64,000 nt of DNA from the IMG/VR virus record IMGVR_UViG_3300029267_004162, positions 62,001 through 126,000 of that record. One strand, written 5' to 3'. Positions 22,264-60,961 of the stretch are shown one piece after another. Numbering within the stretch: the first letter of the stretch is position 1; every line of letters begins with the position of its first letter. The translations under genes and the position numbers were made by a program. The notes below the pieces were generated by a model. That model did not search any database. It had not been told where the DNA came from and worked only from the letters and a program-made list of their open reading frames with translations.

Positions 22264-22270
22264 CTAGTTT

Positions 22271-22321
22271 CTCCTTCGTGGTAACTTGTCCCGATTCAAC
22301 ACCATGTTGAATCGTCGAAGG
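22271..22321 (-). promoter_or_regulatory. Structured 5' leader occluding the SD, copy 1
   Basis: CCTTCG-A-[CGATTCAACA TGG TGTTGAATCG]-GGACAAGTTACCA-CGAAGG-AG, 7 nt before the ATG of the 1007-aa gene. Confidence 0.75.
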
Positions 22322-22330
22322 TACATAGAC

Positions 22331-23961: not shown

Positions 23962-23969
23962 ACTAAAAA

Positions 23970-24015
23970 CTCCTTCGTGGTAACTTTGTCCCGGCACCAC
24001 TTAGCCGTCGAAGGA
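23970..24015 (-). promoter_or_regulatory. Structured 5' leader occluding the SD, copy 2
   Basis: TCCTTCG-A-[CGGC TAAGTGGT GCCG]-GGACAAAGTTACCA-CGAAGGA-G, 8 nt before the ATG at 23961. Confidence 0.75.
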
Positions 24016-24020
24016 AAGGG

Positions 24021-28996: not shown

Positions 28997-29015
28997 ATAC
29001 TTTCAGATTTTAAAA

Positions 29016-29106
29016 GGGGGCGAAGAGAGATTCGAACTCCCACGGCCCGTTCAACTAACGGGGTGCTACCCAAGTCGCTTTTCAACACGATTACATCATT
29101 CGCCCC
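29016..29106 (-). tRNA. Atypical tRNA-like element (8-bp acceptor, 5-bp T stem, no canonical D/anticodon arms)
   Basis: GGGGCGAA/TTCGCCCC stem, GGGAG-TTCGAAT-CTCTC T arm, CCCGTT/AACGGG hairpin; intergenic; no encoded CCA; anticodon not assignable. Confidence 0.5.
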
Positions 29107-29108
29107 AG

Positions 29109-31140: not shown

Positions 31141-31174
31141 AAAATAAAGACCGGTGGGGCCGAAGCCCCACCAG
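31141..31174 (-). terminator. Rho-independent terminator after major capsid gene
   Basis: GGTGGGGC-TTCG-GCCCCACC stem with cUUCGg tetraloop followed by TCTTTATTTT. Confidence 0.9.
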
Positions 31175-31199
31175 TCCAGGGGGAGGAGGAAGGTCTGGT

Positions 31200-32315
31200 C
31201 TAGATCTTCACCCCGCGAGCAATCGCATTGACATTAGGCAGACACGTCGCGTAGATTGACGAGAGGAACCAACCCTTGGCGGGACGACCAATATTGTACT
31301 GGTCAACGGGCTCACTCTTCAATGGCTGACGCACAAAGTGCTTGCCAAGTGACTTCGGTGTACTGAGGAAATAGGTTTCACCCGGACGCAAGACGCGGAG
31401 GTCATGATTGACGAACGCATCAGTAATCAGGGTAACACCCAAAATCGAACCCAAAACACCAGTCAGAACCAACTCATGCTTAGTCACTGGATCGAACCAG
31501 TTGGCGAAATCCGTTTGACCAATGATGTCATTCCAAAGGTCTGAAGCCAGCAGGGCTGTGCTGACAGGCAGACCACGAGACGCGATTAGGTTGCGCAACG
31601 TTTGGAAGAACGCCGGGGTAAAGGTGGAGAAGAAAATTTGGTTTCCACTAGCGCTAACCGCAACATTCAAGAGGCGACGCAATACCGCGTCTTCCTGAAC
31701 CTGCACACGCTCTTGGCCATCTTCCAGGCGCTCGGTGAGGAGATCACCAGCAACTTGGCTGATTTCCTTGTCTTCCACCAGTACATGACTGGTGATGTAA
31801 TACTCTGGCGGGTAGAAATACTGCTCACGAGGAGTGGTAACGAATGGCTTAAAGCCACCCTGACCCTCGACGTGGGCTACCGCCCAATTCTTCCGAATAC
31901 GAGCGCGAGGAAGCTGACCAGCCGCCAATTCAGATTCATCGATGACCCGACGCAGGAAACCCTGACGACGAACGTGATCATAGATCAAATCCGAAACTTC
32001 TTCACCCAAGAGACGCCACTTTTCCCCAGTCGTATCACTGAGTGCTTCAGAAAGCAACTCGATACGCTCTTCCGAAAGAGTTTGAGGGGTCTGTTCCATG
32101 ACTTCGCCGCGAGCGGCCATGTCAATTAGACCATTAATGGCAGAAAGGAGTTCAGTGCGATTACCGGCATTGAATTCGCCATTAGCACCCACCATCGCGG
32201 TGGCTGATTGGCGAACCTTGCCAGTCTTTGGATCCCTGAAGGTACCCTTCAGGGAAGTAACGGGTTCGCCCTTTTTGGTGACGAACTTACGACGATATGG
32301 ATTGTTCACTTTCAT
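31200..32315 (-). CDS. Major capsid protein (HK97-fold, large-phage type)
   Basis: 371 aa from MKVNNPY (SD GAGG); RRQGFLRRV...PPEYYIT...QVQEDAVLRRLL...LGSILGVTLITD pattern; follows scaffold/decoration genes and has its own terminator. Confidence 0.8.
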   Translation of the reverse strand: MKVNNPYRRKFVTKKGEPVTSLKGTFRDPKTGKVRQSATAMVGANGEFNAGNRTELLSAINGLIDMAARGEVMEQTPQTLSEERIELLSEALSDTTGEKWRLLGEEVSDLIYDHVRRQGFLRRVIDESELAAGQLPRARIRKNWAVAHVEGQGGFKPFVTTPREQYFYPPEYYITSHVLVEDKEISQVAGDLLTERLEDGQERVQVQEDAVLRRLLNVAVSASGNQIFFSTFTPAFFQTLRNLIASRGLPVSTALLASDLWNDIIGQTDFANWFDPVTKHELVLTGVLGSILGVTLITDAFVNHDLRVLRPGETYFLSTPKSLGKHFVRQPLKSEPVDQYNIGRPAKGWFLSSIYATCLPNVNAIARGVKI

Positions 32316-32398
32316 ATCCTCACAGTTGTTGGTTAATCGTTCACTAGGTACACGGGTGTGAATCAGTAACAACAGTGAAATTACAGCAGAGATAAATA

Positions 32399-32446
32399 GC
32401 GGGATGAGGATTCGAACCTACGAATAGACCCAGAACATCTTCCCGC
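32399..32446 (-). ncRNA. 48-nt mini tRNA-like element (acceptor + D-like hairpin + T loop, no anticodon arm)
   Basis: GCGGGA/TCCCGC stem enclosing AGAT-GTTCTGG-GTCT and AGG-TTCGAAT-CCT. Confidence 0.45.
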
Positions 32447-32451
32447 GATAC

Positions 32452-32477
32452 AGGTGGGGGCAAAATTGCCCCCACCT
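32452..32477. terminator. Strong GC-rich hairpin (terminator or processing stem)
   Basis: AGGTGGGGGCAA-AA-TTGCCCCCACCT perfect inverted repeat; U-tract weak. Confidence 0.6.
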
Positions 32478-32488
32478 TAAAGTCTTGA

Positions 32489-34508: not shown

Positions 34509-35360
34509 CTAGTCTTGGGTACCACGAAGAGTTTGACGGAACCGATCACGCACATCTTGCGGTTGCCCGCCGTTTCCAGTTGTCAAACTAACAGAATTGT
34601 CCTCAAGTTGAGAAGCCAGACTCTGAGTATCTTCATTGCCCTCTTCGAGGACAGCAGCACTCATGTCTTTCTTCTCTAACATCCCAATTTGAGATTCCAA
34701 TTCACTCAATGCATCCTCGGACAAATTCATCCATTCTACGGCCTTAGAGACCAGAGTTTGGAGAGTTTCCTGACCACCTTCTTCAAATATACTTTCCACG
34801 ATGGTGTAGGGGTTAGCCACCCCATTGCTGGAAAGGACATCAAAGAAGTGGGCCTTGAGCGGATTGTCCACCAAGTTCTTGGCCATTGCTGAGTTGGCCA
34901 TCTCGGCCGCTCGCGTAAACCGCTTGATGAAGGTGTCCCTAATTTGGCCTTCGTCAACGCCAGATTTTTCAATCTGAACTACATGGCCATTACTGATGAT
35001 ATTCGCCTTAACTGATTCTAAAGCATTCTTCCAAGTGTTCTGAGTCTTGACGGCTTCCAATACCGCCGATTTGTACTCAGAACTGGAAAAATACGAAGCG
35101 ATCGCATCTGAATTGTCCTGATCAGATAGACAGATAGTGGCAACTGGATCAACACCTTCGCAGATGACCCAGGAGACATTTCCATCCTGTGAACGGACCA
35201 TAAACATATCGGTCGATTCGCTGGTATCCAACCGCTTTACTACTTCCGAAAGCAGATTAGTGTCATCGCCTAGTGGGGGTGATCCCACTGGTTCTGCGTC
35301 TGCCTTGATAGCACTAAGACGGCCTTCTACCTCTTCCCGAAGGGCAGAAATATTCGGCAT
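34509..35360 (-). CDS. Putative prohead scaffold/core protein
   Basis: 283 aa acidic helical protein, first gene of the head operon; SD AGGAG. Confidence 0.55.
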   Translation of the reverse strand: MPNISALREEVEGRLSAIKADAEPVGSPPLGDDTNLLSEVVKRLDTSESTDMFMVRSQDGNVSWVICEGVDPVATICLSDQDNSDAIASYFSSSEYKSAVLEAVKTQNTWKNALESVKANIISNGHVVQIEKSGVDEGQIRDTFIKRFTRAAEMANSAMAKNLVDNPLKAHFFDVLSSNGVANPYTIVESIFEEGGQETLQTLVSKAVEWMNLSEDALSELESQIGMLEKKDMSAAVLEEGNEDTQSLASQLEDNSVSLTTGNGGQPQDVRDRFRQTLRGTQD

Positions 35361-35708
35361 TTCAACGCTCCTAACATGGTAACAATTTTTGATGTATGCT
35401 TATATCGCCAAAGAAAATTGGCAGCTAATATCGCCAAAGGAAATTGGCAAGCTGTTACCAGCTCGTGGTAACAAACACTAAAGTTGTATCATCAGGAGAT
35501 GATCTGCGTCGTCTGAGTCGGTCTATCTGACCTCCCAACGATGCAGAAATGGGGAGGGATCACTAAAATTACACCTCTAAAAGAGGCTCACTTCTATTTA
35601 CGAGTGTGTTACAGGAAGGAAATTTGAGGCTAATTGGTAGGCTAAAAACCTACTTGGTACACCGCCGCCTCTTCTTTTCGGGAGAGATTAAGTGGAGCAC
35701 GTTTCTTC
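35361..35708 (-). promoter_or_regulatory. Hairpin-rich non-coding region upstream of the head operon
   Basis: Longest intergenic gap; 22-bp tandem repeat (35402-35423, 35428-35449), TGTTACCA-N5-TGGTAACA palindrome (35453-35473), further short stems. Confidence 0.65.
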
Positions 35709-36407
35709 TTAGCCATTAACCGACTCAATCAAGATATGTAGGTCATTGAGATCGGTGAATTCATGATCTGGCCTGTGGGTGCCAATATCATAAATGCGGT
35801 TGGCTCTATTTACCCACCCACTACAAATACCCGCCCGAATTGCGCCCCCTACGTCACTATATAGTGAATCACCAACATGAATGACGTGTTCACGTCGCCA
35901 GCCAGTAAATTCAAGTGCATCCTCGAAAATGCGTGGATTGGGCTTGTAAGAACGAGAGTCCTCGGATGTTACCACCCCAGTTACTTGAATATCATGCAGT
36001 GCCAACGCCTGATCCACATCGGCTCGGTCAGTATTTGATACTATGCAAATAGGCGTGCAAAAATTCGCCAGAAAAGACCTCACTTCTGGCTGCAACGGTG
36101 GATTCTTACAAGACACGACTAAGGTTTTGACGTATGGAACTGGATCAAGATCAACGATACCTATCGCTGCCATCGTTTCCCGTAACGTTTGCACCTCGAT
36201 CTCGAATAGCGTCAGGAAGTTGCCATCGTTATGATAGTCTACGGCCCTCAAAAACTTTTCACCCCAGGCAACACTAAGCTTGGATGGTGACAATTCGATG
36301 CCCGTATCTCTAATGATGGTGGCACATACCATCTCAACAGCGGCGCGATCACCAGCCGTGAGCGTCCCATACATATCCATGAATACGCCATCAAATCTCG
36401 TCATCAT
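35709..36407 (-). CDS. HAD-superfamily (subfamily IA) hydrolase
   Basis: DMYGTL, VSN, YKPNPRIF, HVGDSLYSDVGGA motifs. Confidence 0.9.
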   Translation of the reverse strand: MMTRFDGVFMDMYGTLTAGDRAAVEMVCATIIRDTGIELSPSKLSVAWGEKFLRAVDYHNDGNFLTLFEIEVQTLRETMAAIGIVDLDPVPYVKTLVVSCKNPPLQPEVRSFLANFCTPICIVSNTDRADVDQALALHDIQVTGVVTSEDSRSYKPNPRIFEDALEFTGWRREHVIHVGDSLYSDVGGAIRAGICSGWVNRANRIYDIGTHRPDHEFTDLNDLHILIESVNG

Positions 36408-36427
36408 CTCGTCATCATCTCGTCATC
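36395..36427. repeat. Three exact 11-bp tandem copies (ATCTCGTCATC) across the HAD start codon
   Basis: Read directly: 36395-36405, 36406-36416, 36417-36427. Confidence 0.9.
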
Positions 36428-36437
36428 GAGTAACAGT

Positions 36438-36812
36438 TTATGGTCTGGATTCATCAATTGCCTTTTGTTCTACCACTTGCGGACCTTTGTTGACTAGACG
36501 AATGCAACACTTTTTAAATTTCTTTCCGCTACCACAGGGACACGGGCGATTACGCAAACAATTCTTAACCTGTCTTATCTCGGTTACATCTTTATTCTGA
36601 CAAGCCTTGTCATATGCTTTCTGTAAACGAGGCTTTAAAGCCCCCTCGTCTTCTTCCCCTATAAACTCTCTCGTTACCCTTTTGGCTTCTGTTATATTTC
36701 CGGCGACTTCACTTTCAGAGGTGGTACCGCCCGGACTGGTTCTGTCAACGCTGGTTTCTTCATGCATTTTTGTTGTTCCTTTATTCGTTGTTTTTCTGCT
36801 TGTTTTAACCAA
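36438..36812 (-). CDS. SEC-C motif protein (start uncertain; overlaps TGT 3' end)
   Basis: RNRPCPCGSGKKFKKCC. Confidence 0.75.
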   Translation of the reverse strand: MVKTSRKTTNKGTTKMHEETSVDRTSPGGTTSESEVAGNITEAKRVTREFIGEEDEGALKPRLQKAYDKACQNKDVTEIRQVKNCLRNRPCPCGSGKKFKKCCIRLVNKGPQVVEQKAIDESRP

Positions 36813-38571: not shown

Positions 38572-39189
38572 TCAGCGACCAGAGTTAACCAGATCAATTC
38601 TAGATGATCCGGCCAGAGCACCGGTCTCCACAAGCGTAAATTCCCGAGCGGCCCTCGGTATACAAAGATTGTGTGCCGCATTACCATCGCGATCCAAGAC
38701 CGCGTGGCAATTGGGGCACGTCCATTTCCTCATACATAACGATAAAGAATCAACTTTAAACCCACAGTGATGACAAATCTTACTGGAGGGGTAAAACCGA
38801 TCCCGAACTACGAGAGATGATCCAGAGGCTTCGCATTTGTAAATTAATTGCCTGCGGAATTCACTCCAAGAGGCATCACTGATATGGCGGGCTAGAGCGT
38901 GGTTTTTGATCATGCCGGCCACGTTTAGGTCCTCGATGCAAATCTCTTGGAACATGTTGGACAACTGAGTAATCAGTTTGTGCAGGAAGTCTTGGCGGTG
39001 ATTGGTGATTCGCCAGTGATGACGAGCCAGTGTCGCTGCTGATTTCCTTCTGTTGTTAGAACCTTTTTGTTTACGGCTATGACGGCGAGACAACTTACGA
39101 AGTTTAGTCAAACCCTTGCCTAAAGCTTTGATGGGTTTCTTCTTGATGAACCTCCGAAAAGATGGGGTCGGAAAGTCTCTCGTTTACAT
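38572..39189 (-). mobile_element. tnpB: Truncated TnpB (IS200/IS605/IS607 OrfB) remnant
   Basis: SRKQKGSNNRRK, ICIEDLNVAGM, FYPSSKICHHCG, WTCPNCHAVLDRDGNAA; RuvC-I and N-terminal domains missing; in-frame ATG-TAA at 39189-39184. Confidence 0.85.
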
Positions 39190-39222: not shown

Positions 39223-40485
39223 TTACGCAACCACGCCTTGGCACATTACTGATTTGATTGGATTCCAGTCAGCCCCAACATCCGTCAGGTAGTACACTCC
39301 CGCTCCTTCAATCTTTGTTGTACATTCATACAAATTTTTAACGGATTCAGGGATGTCCTGACCAAAAGCTGTTACAAGGCAAATATCTTCGGAGGCTTCG
39401 GATGCCAAGAAATGGCCGTTTTTTGTTATCCCGGCGGTATTGGAAATTGCCCATTTATTTGTATCTTGGGGTGGAGTGCTCACTAAATATTGTAAGGCTG
39501 GGATACCATTTTTGATCAAAACCGAAGCAAAATACTTCGAGCGAACCGGGAATTCCTTCATGCCCTCCCATAACCCAAAGAGCAATTCAGTATAACTAAA
39601 AGCGCAAGCCGCCACCTGGGCTTCAGTAGGATGTGGCATACGGGTAGTGTATTCTAAGAAATACATTTCCCCATCCGGAGTAACCATACAGTTGATATCG
39701 AAAAACCCTACGTGTCCTCTTATTTTGACCTCATGTGCTCGCATGAGATCGCCAATCGGAAAGGACAGTTGATCCAATTCCGTCCAGGTCATAAATTGAC
39801 CACAAGATCCTGATTCCCCAGTCATCTCAGTGGACCTGATCTGTTTAGGGTACCGTCGCTTGTATTCTTGAATCATGGTAAAAGGTTGTAGGAATTTGCC
39901 CTCTGCCCCCATGAACCCACCGAATCCAACTTCTTCACCTTCTATAAACTCTTGGTATACGGCACCCTGAAAATTAGTGGTCTTCAAAAACAAATCGCGT
40001 TTGTACAGCACCATTGTTCGGATAGAATTGCCCGGAAATCGTTGCTTAACCACATACTGATTTTCATCGAACTTAACCACTACTTTATCACCAGGAAACA
40101 TTTGTGCTTTATCTGGATCAGTAGTCGTCCGAGGAATTTTTATCCAGGGAGCCAACTTTTTGATAAACATAGCAGCAAACCCACGATCTAGTTCTAGTCT
40201 AGCACCAAGATCAACTGCTCGAATTTGCTGAGCTTCCCCCAGATTTGAAAAATGGTCTACGTAAAAAATCAAATCCGAAGGTCGGGAAATCTCTTTTACG
40301 CCCTCCCCCAACTGCCGCCAAGTCGAATACCACCGGATAGACATTCCAGGAGGTAAAACTTTTTCTTCGTCTGGGGGTTCGGGGGCCACTACATGAAAAA
40401 ACACCTCCACCGTGTCTTTAATCAAAGCAATAGCCAAAGCAAAGGGACACCAGTCCCCCACGAAATGAACTCTCCGAGTAGTCAT
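39223..40485 (-). CDS. PurD-like ATP-grasp amine ligase
   Basis: LELDRGFA, VVVKFD, QEFIEGEEVG, QEYKR, TGESG, GFFDINCM, YFLEYTTRMPHPT: divergent GAR-synthetase pattern. Confidence 0.8.
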   Translation of the reverse strand: MTTRRVHFVGDWCPFALAIALIKDTVEVFFHVVAPEPPDEEKVLPPGMSIRWYSTWRQLGEGVKEISRPSDLIFYVDHFSNLGEAQQIRAVDLGARLELDRGFAAMFIKKLAPWIKIPRTTTDPDKAQMFPGDKVVVKFDENQYVVKQRFPGNSIRTMVLYKRDLFLKTTNFQGAVYQEFIEGEEVGFGGFMGAEGKFLQPFTMIQEYKRRYPKQIRSTEMTGESGSCGQFMTWTELDQLSFPIGDLMRAHEVKIRGHVGFFDINCMVTPDGEMYFLEYTTRMPHPTEAQVAACAFSYTELLFGLWEGMKEFPVRSKYFASVLIKNGIPALQYLVSTPPQDTNKWAISNTAGITKNGHFLASEASEDICLVTAFGQDIPESVKNLYECTTKIEGAGVYYLTDVGADWNPIKSVMCQGVVA

Positions 40486-41216
40486 ACCAATTCCTTTGGT
40501 TTAACATCATACTCAGTTGAATCCTGGCCTTCAGCAGTCATAAAAGCCCAGTGCCTACCTCGACAAGCAAAACAACCACCACAATGATCTGATTTGCTAT
40601 TTTGAAAACAAGACACCGTCGTTTCCAATGGAGCCCCCAATGCTCTACCCAAACGAACAACTGCGGCTTTGTCTAGCCCAGCTAACGCATCGATCATTCC
40701 AAAATGGACTGCTGTTCCAGGGTGATTTTCGTGATAAGGTGTAAAATCGTTGTACAAAGAGCCGATTTCTCCACGGAATTCACTAGAATCCATAGTATCA
40801 AACACACCCCCAAGAAATTCATTCGTAAAATCTTTAGTGGCCGGGTCATTCATTCCAGAACCCCCAGTATCAGCATCCATCTCGCCAGTGTATACTTTTT
40901 CCACACCTATCTTTTCAGCCATCGCCAAAGCAAGGGAGTATTGAAATAACTTGAACCCAGGAATGTAATTACTTCCTGGAATTTGCAACTTGTCCAAAAC
41001 ATCCCGCATATCCACACGAGTCAATTTAAGACCAAGAAGACATGCAATTCTATTCTGCGATTCAACGACCTTTTCTTGTCCCCATAAATTCAGCGATAAC
41101 AATAGGGGGTAGGCCCCGGCTTTCTGGAGCATAGCAGCTACCACAGTGGAATCCAAACCGCCGCTAAAAAGTACCAGAGATTTGTAAACTTGCGTATGTG
41201 TATGCGTGTGGGTCAA
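40482..41216 (-). CDS. Divergent QueC paralogue (PP-loop ATPase)
   Basis: SGGLDS and SCF...HCGGCFAC retained; canonical VPxRN replaced by IPGFK and YPDCR absent. Confidence 0.8.
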   Translation of the reverse strand: MTHTHTHTQVYKSLVLFSGGLDSTVVAAMLQKAGAYPLLLSLNLWGQEKVVESQNRIACLLGLKLTRVDMRDVLDKLQIPGSNYIPGFKLFQYSLALAMAEKIGVEKVYTGEMDADTGGSGMNDPATKDFTNEFLGGVFDTMDSSEFRGEIGSLYNDFTPYHENHPGTAVHFGMIDALAGLDKAAVVRLGRALGAPLETTVSCFQNSKSDHCGGCFACRGRHWAFMTAEGQDSTEYDVKPKELV

Positions 41217-41932
41217 ACGAGAGCCTCCGGAGTATCTTTACTCTTCTTAACCATAGCGATGAAATGCAAACAGCATTCTATTTGATTACGGGGAAACCCC
41301 AAGTGTTCAACACAATACCGAATTACTTGATCGGAATCTAAAGATTTAGTGTGCGTCCCAGCGCGACCCATGATGGTAAGTTTACCTCCACGAGTACCAG
41401 CCACCAACTGCTCCATGGATTCCTTCACAAGTCTCCTGGTGAAAATAAACCGGGAAGTGATGTGTTCTTGGGTTAGACAATAGGCCAGTTGTTTTCCATA
41501 CACTTCAGCATCAAAAGAATCGGCGTGAAATTTGTACAGGGTTTGGGGTGTAGTCGCAACACCCTGACGAATAACAGCACCATTGCATAGGGAAGCCCTC
41601 CCCGGAATAGAATAATCTTGTTCGACGCCCCAAAGATCAAAAGCAAGGAACATAAAAGAGGGGTCGATAATCCAGCGGTGGTCCACCAGCAAAATTGAGT
41701 GGGTCAATTGCCCCTTCACTTCCACAACTACTAGTTGGCCTTGTCCCAACAGTTGTTGTGCCTGTCGGGCTAAGTGAAAGCAGTTTCCTGATTTGGCCCC
41801 GTAGGCCAAATCTTTTTGAGGATAATCCGGGGTGCCTCTTCCCTTGGCAAGAGCCGTGATCTTAGAGATGGTCTCAAATAACCAGGTTTGAGGATTCAGT
41901 TTTTCTACGGCCTGTTGCAAAAAAGAAGTCAT
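41213..41932 (-). CDS. Arylamine N-acetyltransferase / transglutaminase-like Cys-His-Asp protein
   Basis: SGNCFHL...THSILLVD...WIIDPSF triad spacing like the NAT family. Confidence 0.6.
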   Translation of the reverse strand: MTSFLQQAVEKLNPQTWLFETISKITALAKGRGTPDYPQKDLAYGAKSGNCFHLARQAQQLLGQGQLVVVEVKGQLTHSILLVDHRWIIDPSFMFLAFDLWGVEQDYSIPGRASLCNGAVIRQGVATTPQTLYKFHADSFDAEVYGKQLAYCLTQEHITSRFIFTRRLVKESMEQLVAGTRGGKLTIMGRAGTHTKSLDSDQVIRYCVEHLGFPRNQIECCLHFIAMVKKSKDTPEALV

Positions 41933-41936
41933 GGTA

Positions 41937-42398
41937 TCACCTCAAATGAGGTTCGAGGGTGGGGAAAGTACCAAATCTATCTGATGCCCATTGTGCCCAC
42001 TCCTCACTGTGTCTCTGTGCGAATGGTTGGATGGCTATGCCCCCACGAGAATTAAAACACCCAATTACTTCAACATACTTGGGGGTCAACAAACTCATCA
42101 AATCTTCGACTATGACGTTGACAACTGCTTCGTGGAAAGCTCCATGATTTCTAAAACTGCCCAGGTAAAGCTTCAGAGCTTTGCTCTCGACTAAACGCTC
42201 CTGAGGAACATAATTGATGTAGATCGTACCCCAATCAGGTTGACTGGTGACGGGACAAATACTGGAGAATTCTGAACAGATCAAGCGAATCCAAAATACC
42301 GACTCCCGTGATGGGCTGGGTACATGTTCTAGAAGTTCAGGATTGTACTGTTGAGTCTGGGAACCAAATCCGGAATTACCTGAGCCTAAATGATTCAT
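41937..42398 (-). CDS. queF: NADPH-dependent preQ0 reductase (type I QueF)
   Basis: EFSSICPVTSQPD, QueF motif ESKALKLY, FHE, FNSRGGI. Confidence 0.93.
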   Translation of the reverse strand: MNHLGSGNSGFGSQTQQYNPELLEHVPSPSRESVFWIRLICSEFSSICPVTSQPDWGTIYINYVPQERLVESKALKLYLGSFRNHGAFHEAVVNVIVEDLMSLLTPKYVEVIGCFNSRGGIAIQPFAQRHSEEWAQWASDRFGTFPTLEPHLR

Positions 42399-48976: not shown

Positions 48977-49333
48977 TTATAGCTTCCACCAAAGACCTTC
49001 CCCGTCAATGCGCATCACAGTCGCCGTTCCTTCCAACCCAGAGACAGTGCTTAATTCAAAAGTGTCTCCTGAGTTAAGACCTTCCATTGCAAAATTAGGT
49101 TTAGTGAGGACTCCACGAGTTACTAAAGACGTGGGATAACGAAGCGATCCACAATTCAAACAACGATTCTCTATGATAGCGACATGTTCACAACCTCTGG
49201 CTGGCGCTCCCGCCACTTGCCCAGGACATTTAATCCATTTGTAAAGAAGATATGACCAGTAACGACCTTGCGGAAATGTGCCTGTTGCTACAATCATGTT
49301 GCACCTCTCATCGTATGAGTAGTTAGGATGCAA
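48977..49333 (-). CDS. Hypothetical protein with Cys cluster
   Basis: ORF track. Confidence 0.5.
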   Translation of the reverse strand: MHPNYSYDERCNMIVATGTFPQGRYWSYLLYKWIKCPGQVAGAPARGCEHVAIIENRCLNCGSLRYPTSLVTRGVLTKPNFAMEGLNSGDTFELSTVSGLEGTATVMRIDGEGLWWKL

Positions 49334-49652
49334 TTTTCTCTAAGGTCGCATCCATAGAACCCTGACATCCCAAAACACGATCATCAGCCCCATAGGAAGT
49401 GATTTGATCTTTCTTCCACTCGGCTTTTTCAAAGTGACTACGATAGACAGCCGCTTTACCGGTCTCATCCACTAGCTTCGCTAGTTGAAAAGCTTCTTCC
49501 CTACTGTGACCACAGGTTTCAGCCAGCATCCGAACCACATACTCATACGTGTGGTAGTCATCGTTCCACAGGATAACGGTCCATTCGGGAGATAACTGGG
49601 TTTCAACAACGGGAACGGGAGCGAGAGTGGGGGTGGCGGCTGATGAAGTCAT
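49323..49652 (-). CDS. clpS: ClpS N-end-rule adaptor
   Basis: VILWNDDYHTYEYVVRML...EEAFQLA..VDETGKAAV. Confidence 0.9.
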   Translation of the reverse strand: MTSSAATPTLAPVPVVETQLSPEWTVILWNDDYHTYEYVVRMLAETCGHSREEAFQLAKLVDETGKAAVYRSHFEKAEWKKDQITSYGADDRVLGCQGSMDATLEKIAS

Positions 49653-59306: not shown

Positions 59307-60380
59307 TTAATCGTCATCATCTTCTAGACCTGGGAGCACGCCGCCAGGGGTTGCAGGTGCCAAAGAGGTCTTCTTTTTCTTTTTCTTCTTATCACTTTTC
59401 TTGGTGATTTTCTTACCACTCTTGCTGCTTTTCTTACTACTCTTACTGCTTTTCTTTTTTCTCTTGGGCGGAGTCTCTTCTGTTTCCTCGGAGTCTTCGT
59501 CTTCGTCGCCCACGAAATGATAATCGGGTTTCTTGTGAATGGTATGAACTGCCTTTAAGGTGGGATCAACTTGATCCTTAGTCATGAGATTCGCGGCAGT
59601 TGCCCAATCCACAATCTCTGGCACAAGTTTGAACGGAACATACCCATTTGCAAACATGGAGATAAGGGTATCTCTGTAATCCCCGGTAGTGGTCTTAGCA
59701 TTGTGGGTACCAGGAATCAGGGCAGCATACACCTTACCCAAATCGATCAGTTCATATTCACATTCTTCTTCAGTAAGAGCACAATTGGGATCAGGTTCAG
59801 AACCGGCCGGACACAACGCGATAGACACATTCTTACGCGATGTTTGGTCCAGGCCAACCGTCAATTCCAGATCATAACCCTTCTTCTTACCAGTGGGCTT
59901 ACGCCCCTTGATACGATTCATGGCCTTGTTCAACTCTTTGACATTGTACCAGTTAAGCCACAAGAGTTGAATTGGGTCTGCCGCCCCCGAGTCTTGTAAT
60001 TCTCGGTTGATCATGTTGATAACATCAGCAACCGATGGCTTAGACCTCTTAGCAGGAAGAAAAGCACACGCCAGGCAATGCCATTCGTGTGTCTCATCAT
60101 CCATCCGTTCAGCTTCAGGATCCCAACGAGAACAAATGAGTGGGAATACTTTGTTGTTTTTGGTGGTAATCCAATGCCGCCGAAGCGGTAGGATATTCCC
60201 CAGCAGTCTGATACGAATGACCGTATCTACAGCGTGATCGTGAAGATTGAAAACTCTCCCACCATCCCGAAGCTCATCCATGTAAGTGGGCTGACGATTC
60301 TCGTCCTGAGTCCCTTCCTTGGTTTTGGACACATCTTTCCCAGCGTAGGCACCTGATGATGCCGAAGTCTTAAATGCCAT
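59307..60380 (-). CDS. Single-stranded DNA-binding protein (gp32-like)
   Basis: IRIRLL...RRHWI...PLIC...CLAC...GYDLEL; acidic DDDD terminus. Confidence 0.65.
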   Translation of the reverse strand: MAFKTSASSGAYAGKDVSKTKEGTQDENRQPTYMDELRDGGRVFNLHDHAVDTVIRIRLLGNILPLRRHWITTKNNKVFPLICSRWDPEAERMDDETHEWHCLACAFLPAKRSKPSVADVINMINRELQDSGAADPIQLLWLNWYNVKELNKAMNRIKGRKPTGKKKGYDLELTVGLDQTSRKNVSIALCPAGSEPDPNCALTEEECEYELIDLGKVYAALIPGTHNAKTTTGDYRDTLISMFANGYVPFKLVPEIVDWATAANLMTKDQVDPTLKAVHTIHKKPDYHFVGDEDEDSEETEETPPKRKKKSSKSSKKSSKSGKKITKKSDKKKKKKKTSLAPATPGGVLPGLEDDDD

Positions 60381-60932: not shown

Positions 60933-60961
60933 ATTATACCACAAAAGAGTCCCTTTGTCAA
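60933..60961 (-). promoter_or_regulatory. Consensus sigma70 promoter with extended -10
   Basis: TTGACA-AAGGGACTCTTTTGTGG(17)-TATAAT. Confidence 0.9.

What the first reader, a model, noticed from the sequence alone, without database searches (positions are those of the whole stretch)
35361..35708. Hairpin array ahead of the head operon that reuses the GTTACCA motif
Seen on the minus strand: a chain of short stems (GTAGG/CCTAC, CCTCT/AGAGG, CCTCCC/GGGAGG, ATCATC/GATGAT), the palindrome TGTTACCA-CGAGC-TGGTAACA containing the same GTTACCACGA 10-mer as the two leaders at 22-24 kb, two 22-bp tandem copies each forming GCCAA/TTGGC, and another GTTACCA 4 nt before the scaffold SD. The reverse motif TGGTAAC also lies just downstream of the promoter at 60933. 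Inference: a shared regulator (DNA operator or RNA-binding protein) for late genes, or an ncRNA. A lone 7-mer is expected several times by chance, so only the positioned copies count.
Basis: partly seen in the sequence, partly recalled or inferred. Interest (0 to 1): 0.6.

Follow-up and report, generated by a model that had tools for sequence, protein, structure and literature searches.

The report
Structured spacer before phage head genes
A 348-base non-coding gap in front of the head-assembly genes of an uncultured 263-kb phage really does hold a palindrome, a tandem repeat and several weak hairpins and is probably a local control region, but the idea that its GTTACCA word marks a shared late-gene regulator is not borne out by the genome.

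Summary
One detail is wrong: the tandem unit is 26 nt, not 22.

- **The gap itself.** It is the non-coding stretch 35361-35708 (minus strand) between a HAD-hydrolase gene and the first gene of the head module.
- **Structure.** It folds better than shuffles (z -3.1). It has 9 perfect stems of 5 bp or more against about 3.8 expected (P about 0.01-0.03).
- **Local motif cluster.** Its three copies of TGTTACCA within 97 nt form one of only five non-coding 8-mer clusters in the 262,650-bp genome.
- **Genome-wide, the motif is not special.** Outside this gap GTTACCA is not enriched in intergenic DNA (4 of 46 copies, 3-4 expected). It is not enriched upstream of start codons either (3 observed, 3.0 expected).
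- **Link to the 22-24 kb leaders.** A 10-mer shared with those leaders arises by chance in about 3% of 348-nt chunks.
- **Conservation.** It cannot be tested. Only identical copies of this phage were found, and distant relatives have 50-100-nt gaps there without the word.

My best reading is an orphan regulatory spacer where the replication/metabolism block meets the virion block. Its 3' third looks like an operator/promoter cluster for the head operon. A GUUACCA-centred RNA regulon stays possible but unproven. Interest is low to moderate.

The parts
35361..35708 (-). Whole 348-nt non-coding spacer between the HAD-hydrolase gene (35709-36407) and the first head-module gene (34509-35360)
   Evidence: All three sense frames carry 5-7 stops. 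RNA fold z -3.13. Among the 3 most structured of 24 long gaps. No other copy in the genome.
35637..35653 (-). Hairpin H1 (GTAGGTT / AGCCTAC, 3-nt loop); the stop codon of a possible 24-aa small ORF lies inside it
   Evidence: -7.1 kcal/mol, z -4.47, 0 of 200 shuffles as good.
35573..35587 (-). Hairpin H2 (GCCTCT / AGAGGT) followed by a weak T-run; the only lenient terminator-like site in the 5' part
   Evidence: -6.5 kcal/mol, z -2.2. Listed by the terminator scan.
35531..35557 (-). Hairpin H3 (CCTCCC / GGGAGG, 15-nt loop)
   Evidence: -9.3 kcal/mol but z only -1.5; 21 of 200 shuffles as good.
35488..35503 (-). Hairpin H4 (ATCATC / GATGAT) with the loop TCCT, complementary to the SD core
   Evidence: -6.2 kcal/mol, z -2.1.
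35453..35473 (-). Perfect palindrome TGTTACCA-N5-TGGTAACA (arms A and A'); contains the 10-mer GTTACCACGA shared with the two leaders
   Evidence: unique in the genome. -9.4 kcal/mol, z -2.8.
35398..35449 (-). Two 26-nt tandem copies (92% identical), each with a GCCAA-N6-TTGGC dyad (35433-35448 and 35407-35422)
   Evidence: Hairpins -8.5 and -7.4 kcal/mol, z -3.3 and -2.6. The word TTGGCGATAT occurs only here.
35377..35385 (-). Third copy (A2) of TTGGTACCA's counterpart TTGTTACCA, directly ahead of the SD; it can pair with arm A' as an alternative to the local palindrome hairpin
   Evidence: repeats D6, I4. (the minimum-energy fold of the 116-nt 3' part uses A':A2). (A:A' -37.9 against A':A2 -36.3 kcal/mol).
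35358..35373 (-). SD TAGGAG (35368-35373) and ATG (35358-35360) of the 283-aa head-module gene
   Evidence: The same gene start was called in the public contigs.
35642..35716 (-). Possible 24-aa small ORF whose ATG overlaps the HAD stop codon (ATGGCTAA); status unknown
   Evidence: No conservation data.
22264..22330 (-). Leader of the 1007-aa virion-block gene: CCTTCGACG, a 10-bp hairpin, then GGGACAAGTTACCACGAAGGAG
   Evidence: the outer helix CCUUCG/CGAAGG covers the SD; z -2.5.
23962..24020 (-). Leader of the 193-aa gene: the same flanking words around a different, shorter hairpin
   Evidence: The long motif occurs only at these two places in the genome.

Best explanation
The gap is a lineage-specific regulatory spacer at the point where the replication and nucleotide-metabolism block ends and the virion block begins. 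All genes in both blocks run in the same direction.

Its last ~110 nt most likely form a DNA-level operator/promoter cluster for the head operon. This part holds an 8-5-8 palindrome, two 26-bp direct repeats that each carry a 5-6-5 dyad, and a third copy of the palindrome arm beside the ribosome-binding site. A phage factor would bind here, and one of the two phage-encoded sigma-70-family proteins may be involved.

The first ~230 nt are a run of weak hairpins on the read-through or 5'-untranslated RNA. At most they modulate RNA stability or translation.

**Shown:**
- The elements exist.
- They are more than chance locally.
- The gap is non-coding.
- It lies at the junction of the two gene blocks.
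- It lacks a sigma-70 promoter, a strong intrinsic terminator and any Rfam family.

**Inferred:**
- That a protein binds the repeats.
- That transcription of the head operon starts or is controlled here.

The sharing of GTTACCA(CGA) with the two leaders at 22-24 kb is treated as possibly meaningful but unproven.
For: **Position.**
- Downstream lie the 283-aa protein, a virion structural protein (phrog_16710) and the major head protein (phrog_2522, E 1.9e-56). The 283-aa protein is homologous to the first gene of the head operon in relatives (E 1e-11).
- Upstream lie a HAD hydrolase, a SEC-C-motif ORF, a 622-aa protein, QueC/QueF, topoisomerase II, a clamp loader and SSB. The Pseudomonas phage Lauda homologue of the 622-aa protein sits among sigma factor, SSB and UvsX genes.

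**Local non-randomness.**
- Fold z -3.13.
- 9 stems against 3.8 expected.
- TGTTACCA three times in 97 nt, one of 5 non-coding 8-mer clusters in 262 kb.
- A 26-nt tandem repeat whose two differences fall outside the dyads.

**DNA-level reading.**
- The stems are perfect Watson-Crick dyads, and the antisense strand folds at least as well as the sense strand (z -4.7 against -3.2).
- Palindrome-plus-direct-copy arrays of this same word in other viral contigs sit at evident protein-binding loci: next to primase/helicase genes, or upstream of a terminase gene.

**Other support.**
- The phage encodes two Sigma70_r2 proteins, so non-consensus promoters are expected.
- The four genes after the gap are bounded downstream by a strong GC hairpin at about 32.46 kb.
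Against: - No promoter could be identified, and no recurrent late-promoter word was found in the intergenic DNA.
- None of the elements recurs anywhere else in the genome, so no regulon can be demonstrated.
- There are no expression data and no conservation data.
- Relatives manage with 50-100-nt gaps before the homologous gene, so much of the 348 nt may be dispensable.
- Half of the stems are individually no better than chance.
- No DNA-binding protein was identified among ten small window proteins scanned.
Confidence: 0.42

Rival explanations
1. RNA-level control. The gap is the structured 5' untranslated region of the head-operon mRNA. The three copies A, A' and A2 form a two-state switch, and a protein that reads single-stranded GUUACCA next to the SD co-regulates translation of this gene and of the two genes with the 22-24 kb leaders. 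This is the RNA-binding-protein version of the reader's idea.
For: - GTTACCA ends 15-16 nt before the ATG in all three genes.
- The two leaders share complementary flanks (CCUUCG/CGAAGG) that cover the SD. These enclose hairpins of different sequence and length, with 27 against 21 nt between the conserved words. That fits an RNA helix better than a fixed-spacing promoter.
- In the gap, A' can pair with A or with A2 at nearly equal energy (-37.9 against -36.3 kcal/mol), and the SD is predicted paired with probability 0.7-0.99.
- The sense strand is unusually rich in CCUC/CUCC/UCCU words: 11 against a mean of 3.2, the top 1.5% of windows.
Against: - Only three genes carry the word, and genome-wide there is no upstream enrichment.
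- A positional 7-mer match from a 22-nt block is expected about 0.5-1 time by chance among 342 genes (my estimate counts).
- The context differs. In the leaders the word lies in an internal loop; here one copy is a stem arm.
- The antisense strand folds as well or better, so nothing points to sense-strand RNA.
- The fold of the translation-start region is not unusual.
- There are no relatives to test for covariation.
Confidence: 0.25
2. Mostly non-functional DNA. The gap would be a leftover from gene loss or rearrangement, for example the lost N-terminal part of a once longer head-module gene or a scar from insertion of the HAD cassette. A recent 26-nt slippage duplication and chance stems would account for the rest.
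For: - Homologues of the 283-aa protein are longer at the N-terminus: 361-364 aa in L005/L007 and 664 aa in Dickeya phage AD1. The alignment starts at residue 44 of ours against residue 137 or 420 of theirs.
- Gene order upstream is not conserved among relatives.
- A TnpB remnant lies 3 kb upstream.
- Single 5-bp stems are at chance level.
Against: - Decayed coding DNA should not fold better than its shuffles (z -3.1).
- It should not hold a perfect 8-5-8 palindrome plus a third copy of the arm.
- The phage is otherwise tightly packed, about 91-94% coding.
- No frame shows residual similarity to a protein, and there is no match in the phage database.
Confidence: 0.18
3. A separate small non-coding RNA gene, on either strand, lies in the gap.
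For: The gap is significantly structured on both strands, and it is long for this genome.
Against: - No Rfam family even at E up to 5, apart from one spurious hit.
- No tRNA or tmRNA.
- No sigma-70-like promoter on either strand inside the gap, and no strong terminator.
- No RNA run holds the sequence.
Confidence: 0.07
4. A DNA-metabolism site: an iteron-type replication origin or a packaging-recognition site.
For: - The gap combines a palindrome, direct repeats and an A-rich tract.
- In other viral contigs, arrays of the same 9-mer lie beside primase/helicase-like genes or upstream of a terminase gene.
Against: - There are only three copies of the word and two repeats.
- No initiator or terminase gene is adjacent.
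- Cumulative GC skew turns at about 60 kb and 198-206 kb of the genome, not at 97.5 kb.
- The number of palindrome hits in the viral collection (21) is about what I estimate chance would give, so those arrays say nothing about a shared binding protein.
Confidence: 0.05

Closest known systems
Operator/activator-site clusters upstream of phage late operons (for example the dyad TGT-N12-ACA sites of P2/P4 late promoters; recalled from memory, not tested)
   Same: A dyad-symmetric site plus additional repeats lies immediately upstream of a virion-gene operon, in a phage that encodes its own transcription factors (two sigma-70-family genes).
   Different: No promoter hexamers or transcript start are known here. 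The dyad is 8-5-8, not TGT-N12-ACA. The site is unique in the genome, whereas P2-type sites recur at every late promoter.
SD-sequestering leader hairpins and translational operators (T4 RegA and gp32 operators, RNA thermometers; P22 scaffolding-protein autoregulation; recalled from memory)
   Same: Predicted helices cover the SD in the two 22-24 kb leaders and, less convincingly, in this gap. The downstream gene belongs to the head-assembly module, as the autoregulated P22 scaffold gene does.
   Different: No binding protein is known, there is no covariation evidence, and the local fold energy at the start site is ordinary.
Intercistronic processing or stabilising hairpins of phage polycistronic mRNAs (T7 RNase III sites; recalled from memory)
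   Same: A series of hairpins without U-tracts lies between co-directional genes.
   Different: The stems here are short (5-8 bp, -6 to -9 kcal/mol), far from the ~20-bp irregular duplexes of RNase III sites. Not tested experimentally.
Rho-independent terminators of this same phage
   Same: Hairpins downstream of a gene. H2 and one repeat-spanning stem pass a lenient consensus scan.
   Different: The phage's clear terminator, after the major head gene at 31148-31177, has 13 pairs, 9 of them G-C, and a U-tract. Nothing in the gap approaches that.

Membership tests
Any Rfam RNA family (riboswitch, ribozyme, sRNA, leader) | Covariance-model score at or above the family's gathering threshold | tested here: not met
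   No hit in the window at gathering thresholds. At E up to 5 on 35200-35850 there was one spurious lncRNA hit at 20 bits against a threshold of 50.
Intrinsic (Rho-independent) terminator | G+C-rich stem directly followed by a U-tract | tested here: inconclusive
   Two lenient matches with 6 pairs, 3 of them G-C, at 35573-35587 and 35418-35437. The count over 19 kb is only modestly above shuffles (28 against 19.2), and both are far weaker than the phage's own terminator at 31148-31177.
Sigma-70 consensus promoter | TTGACA-like and TATAAT-like hexamers 16-18 nt apart | tested here: not met
   None on either strand within 35361-35708. The phage's consensus promoters (TTGACA-N17-TATAATGG) lie elsewhere.
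Multi-gene regulon motif (shared operator or RNA-binding site for late genes) | Motif enriched in intergenic or upstream DNA relative to coding DNA | tested here: not met
   The 7-mer has 49 copies on both strands. Outside this gap 4 of 46 are intergenic, against 3-4 expected. GTTACC upstream of starts: 3 against 3.0 expected. It is not among the enriched intergenic 6- to 8-mers.
Multi-gene regulon motif (shared operator or RNA-binding site for late genes) | Motif and stems conserved in related phages | not testable with these tools
   Only identical copies were found. The nearest relative shares 55-58% major-head-protein identity, and its contig stops short of this region. More distant relatives have no GTTACCA at the equivalent place.
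Iteron-type replication origin | Several iterons with an AT-rich unwinding element next to an initiator gene, at a skew turning point | tested here: not met
   There are two 26-bp repeats only. The neighbours are a HAD hydrolase and a head-module protein. The skew extremes are at about 60 and 198-206 kb of the genome.
Protein-coding gene or pseudogene | Open frame or residual similarity to proteins | tested here: not met
   There are 5-7 stops in each sense frame. The longest ORFs are 23-37 aa. No DNA match in the phage collection.

The most novel reading that the evidence does not exclude
A small post-transcriptional regulon in an uncultured jumbo phage. A phage protein would read single-stranded GUUACCA placed 15-16 nt before the start codon of three virion-block genes. 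In the head-operon leader, the complementary arm UGGUAACA would act as a built-in switch or decoy that decides whether the SD-proximal copy is exposed.
Probability: 0.12. Interest if true: 0.5.

Novelty: new member of a known kind. Interest (0 to 1): 0.25.

Why it matters
If the 3' cluster is a real operator, it would be a handle on how a very divergent jumbo phage switches on its head genes. This phage has no cultured relative closer than about 33% major-head-protein identity. Finding the protein that binds the cluster would identify a new regulator. As it stands, this is an ordinary, unconserved regulatory-looking spacer. Its main value is as a defined target for transcript-start mapping and DNA or RNA pull-down once the phage or its host is in hand.

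Tried and rejected
**Near relatives for a conservation test.**
- Megablast and blastn of the region against the phage collection gave nothing.
- tblastn and locus searches with the 283-aa and major head proteins gave nothing in the viral contigs.
- The word-based protein search returned only the phage itself for the 283-aa and 193-aa proteins.
- The contigs that carry the 283-aa protein are 100% identical across the gap.
- The one partial run (X5) was the same phage at low depth.

**Pattern scans.**
- The palindrome gave 21 viral hits. That is about what I estimate chance would give, and the contexts are unrelated.
- The leader word gave 0 hits.
- Palindrome plus GCCAA in the metagenome contigs gave only the phage itself and six unrelated hits.

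**Origin of the HAD gene.** No close bacterial homologue was found.

**Late-promoter discovery.** k-mer enrichment in upstream and intergenic DNA returned only SD words, T-loop-like words, the early TATAATGG and a weak TATAAA signal. None of these explains the gap.

**Other searches.**
- Repeat copies elsewhere in the genome: none.
- Origin hypothesis: rejected on GC skew and neighbouring genes.
- Terminase families PF03237 and PF17289 were not found in the genome, so a packaging-site link could not be examined.
- One literature search gave general jumbo-phage transcriptomics but nothing on this clade.

**Technical failures.** One script timed out, and one call was mis-specified.

Full report
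**Context.** The window is bases 62001-126000 of a 262,650-bp IMG/VR virus record judged complete, with 46.6% G+C.
- Its major head protein (31200-32372, minus strand; phrog_2522, E 1.9e-56) is only about 33% identical to those of Erwinia, Dickeya and Pseudomonas jumbo phages such as Alexandra and AD1.
- All window genes lie on the minus strand.
- The finding covers exactly the gap between a HAD-family hydrolase gene (35709-36407; PF00702, E 4.7e-16) and a 283-aa gene (34509-35360).
- The 283-aa protein is homologous to the first gene of the head operon of distant relatives (E 1e-11). It is also homologous to the C-terminal part of AD1 gp140, which precedes a virion structural protein and the major head protein there, as here. 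'Ahead of the head operon' is therefore right. 'Scaffold' is plausible but untested.

**Check of the observation.** Every stem, the palindrome, the repeats and the motif copies are present at the stated places.
- Correction: the tandem unit is 26 nt (35398-35449, 2.0 copies, 92% identity), not 22.
- The gap is truly non-coding. Each sense frame has 5-7 stops. The only notable small ORF is a 24-aa frame whose ATG overlaps the HAD stop codon.
- As RNA the whole gap folds with z -3.13. Among 24 long gaps of the genome it is one of the three most structured, with z -3.2 on the sense strand and -4.7 on the antisense strand.
- Counting perfect stems with loops of 3-15 nt gives 9 of 5 bp or more against 3.8 +/- 1.9 in shuffles (P 0.014). 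It gives 3 of 6 bp or more against about 1 (P 0.06-0.12).
- Taken singly, the GTAGG hairpin (z -4.5), the first repeat hairpin (z -3.3) and the palindrome (z -2.8) stand out. The CCTCCC/GGGAGG stem does not (z -1.5).
- The array is therefore real and about twice as dense as chance, but it is made of weak hairpins (-6 to -9 kcal/mol).

**The motif.** GTTACCA occurs 49 times on the two strands of the genome.
- Three of the seven intergenic copies are inside this gap. Outside it, 4 of 46 are intergenic, where 6.5-8.9% of the genome is intergenic, so 3-4 are expected.
TTACC occurs 9 times against 7.0 expected.
- The word is absent from the lists of enriched intergenic 6- to 8-mers. Those lists are headed by SD words such as CGAAGGAG.
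- The 10-mer GTTACCACGA does occur only three times. However, a random 348-nt chunk of this genome shares an exact word of 10 nt or more with one of the two leaders in about 3% of 20,000 trials. That is not rare across a 64-kb window.
- The copy after the 60.9-kb promoter is a lone 7-mer next to a textbook TTGACA-N17-TATAAT promoter.
- Inside the gap the reuse is not random. TGTTACCA occurs three times (two direct copies and one inverted) within 97 nt. Only 18 loci in the genome have three copies of any 8-mer within 110 nt, and only 5 of them are non-coding.

**The two leaders at 22-24 kb.** They form a genuine two-member family. Both have CCTTCGACG, a hairpin, then GGGACAA(A)GTTACCACGAAGGAG, with 17 identical bases.
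- The hairpins differ in sequence and length.
- The flanking CCUUCG and CGAAGG pair across the SD in both predicted folds.
- This long motif occurs nowhere else in the genome or in the viral collection.
- In the leaders GTTACCA lies in an internal loop. In the gap one copy is a stem arm and one lies free before the SD.
- What the three places share is the distance of the word from the start codon (15-16 nt) and, for one copy, three more bases.
- I estimate the overall coincidence as unlikely but not negligible once the post-hoc choice of the word is counted. I treat the link as possible, not shown.

**What the surroundings say.**
- Upstream of the gap lie replication, repair and nucleotide-modification genes: topoisomerase II, clamp loader, SSB, QueC and QueF.
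- Also upstream are a TnpB remnant, a 622-aa protein, a SEC-C-motif ORF and the HAD gene. The Pseudomonas phage Lauda homologue of the 622-aa protein sits beside a sigma factor, SSB and UvsX.
- Downstream is the virion block.
- The gap is thus the junction of two co-directional modules, where control of late transcription would be expected.
- The genome encodes two proteins with a Sigma70_r2 domain, so late promoters need not resemble the host consensus. No sigma-70-type promoter is present in the gap.
- Nothing there resembles the phage's clear terminator after the major head gene, which has 13 pairs, 9 of them G-C, and a U-tract.

**RNA models.**
- In the last 116-150 nt the arm A' can pair either with A (the local hairpin) or with the SD-proximal copy A2, enclosing the two repeat hairpins. 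The two states are nearly isoenergetic (-37.9 against -36.3 kcal/mol).
- The SD is predicted paired (0.7-0.99) whatever 5' end is assumed, but the local energy is ordinary.
- The sense strand is unusually rich in CCUC/CUCC/UCCU words (11 against a mean of 3.2; top 1.5% of windows). This is a post-hoc observation.
- Because the dyads are perfect Watson-Crick pairs and the antisense strand folds as well or better, nothing distinguishes an RNA role from a DNA one.

**Comparative evidence.**
- None is available at useful distance. Public data hold only identical copies of this phage, in sediment and seawater metagenomes.
- The nearest relative by major head protein (55-58% identity) is on short contigs that end before this region.
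- More distant relatives have 50-100-nt gaps before the homologous gene, holding one hairpin and no GTTACCA.
- In two of them a different short word recurs a few bases before the SD of two head genes each: CTTTACC in L005 and ACTTTCCC in L007. This is suggestive of a family habit but is far too thin to count.
- The same palindrome pattern occurs 21 times in the viral collection, about the number I estimate for chance. Where it is part of larger arrays, the contexts are unrelated: beside primase/helicase-like genes or upstream of a terminase gene. This shows only that such arrays are typical protein-binding DNA.

**Verdict.**
- My preferred reading is an orphan operator/promoter cluster for the head operon, preceded by weak RNA hairpins (confidence 0.42).
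- The main rival is a translational RNA switch shared with the two leaders (0.25).
- Next comes largely non-functional leftover DNA (0.18). The N-terminally shorter 283-aa gene, compared with homologues of 361-664 aa, makes this thinkable.
- A separate ncRNA (0.07) and an origin or packaging site (0.05) have little support.
- Nothing here departs from known kinds of phage regulatory spacers.

Noticed in passing
window 36438-36812 (minus strand): An uncalled ORF ends in a SEC-C zinc-binding motif (CPCGSGKKFKKCC; PF02810, E 1.6e-8). It overlaps the last ~120 nt of the 622-aa gene in another frame. The 43-nt motif stretch (36504-36546) alone matched dozens of unrelated contigs in all four metagenomes. 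It could be a separate small gene or a frameshift extension of the 622-aa protein. It means the 'gap' upstream of the HAD gene is mostly coding.
   Followed up: partly
window 32310-32488 and 28997-29108 (minus strand): Two gaps, one before the major head gene and one before the 194-aa gene, contain pieces that look like tRNA: the T-loop word GGTTCGAATCC or GAGTTCGAATC flanked by acceptor-like complementary ends. The first follows a strong GC hairpin. ARAGORN and Rfam (even at E up to 1) call nothing. The word GTTCGAAT is enriched in the genome's intergenic DNA (5 segments against 0.6 expected).
   Followed up: partly
window 22264-22330 and 23962-24020 (minus strand): These two leaders form a two-member family. 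Conserved complementary flanks (CCUUCG and CGAAGG) pair across the SD around hairpins of different sequence and length. This looks like an SD-sequestering translational operator and is worth its own study.
   Followed up: partly
window 38572-39111 (minus strand): N-terminally truncated TnpB (OrfB_IS605 plus the Cas12f1-like TNB domain; matches positions 214-360 of 403 in phrog_506). It is an IS605-family remnant 3 kb upstream of the gap.
   Followed up: no
window 40482-42398 (minus strand): QueC-like and QueF-like genes suggest 7-deazaguanine modification of the phage DNA. A ClpS adaptor homologue lies at 49323-49652.
   Followed up: no
window 36395-36427: A perfect 11-nt tandem repeat in three copies (ATCTCGTCATC on the plus strand) spans the start of the HAD gene and places several in-frame ATG codons in a row.
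   Followed up: no
genome 1-548 and 262448-262646 (outside the window); genome 40690-40952: The record's ends carry dense short repeats (CGAGGAAG-type words; fold z about -10). Another gap at 40.7 kb is as structured as the one studied here (z -4.9 and -4.3).
   Followed up: no
genome 189242-189436 (minus strand) and 59960-60145 (plus strand), outside the window: Two ORFs (275 and 386 aa) carry a Sigma70_r2 domain. The phage probably redirects host RNA polymerase with its own sigma factors.
   Followed up: no
window 35361-35708, sense strand: There is an excess of CCUC/CUCC/UCCU words (11 against a mean of 3.2 per 348 nt; top 1.5% of windows). Two of the stems are SD-like/anti-SD-like pairs, and one loop shows CUCCU.
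   Followed up: partly
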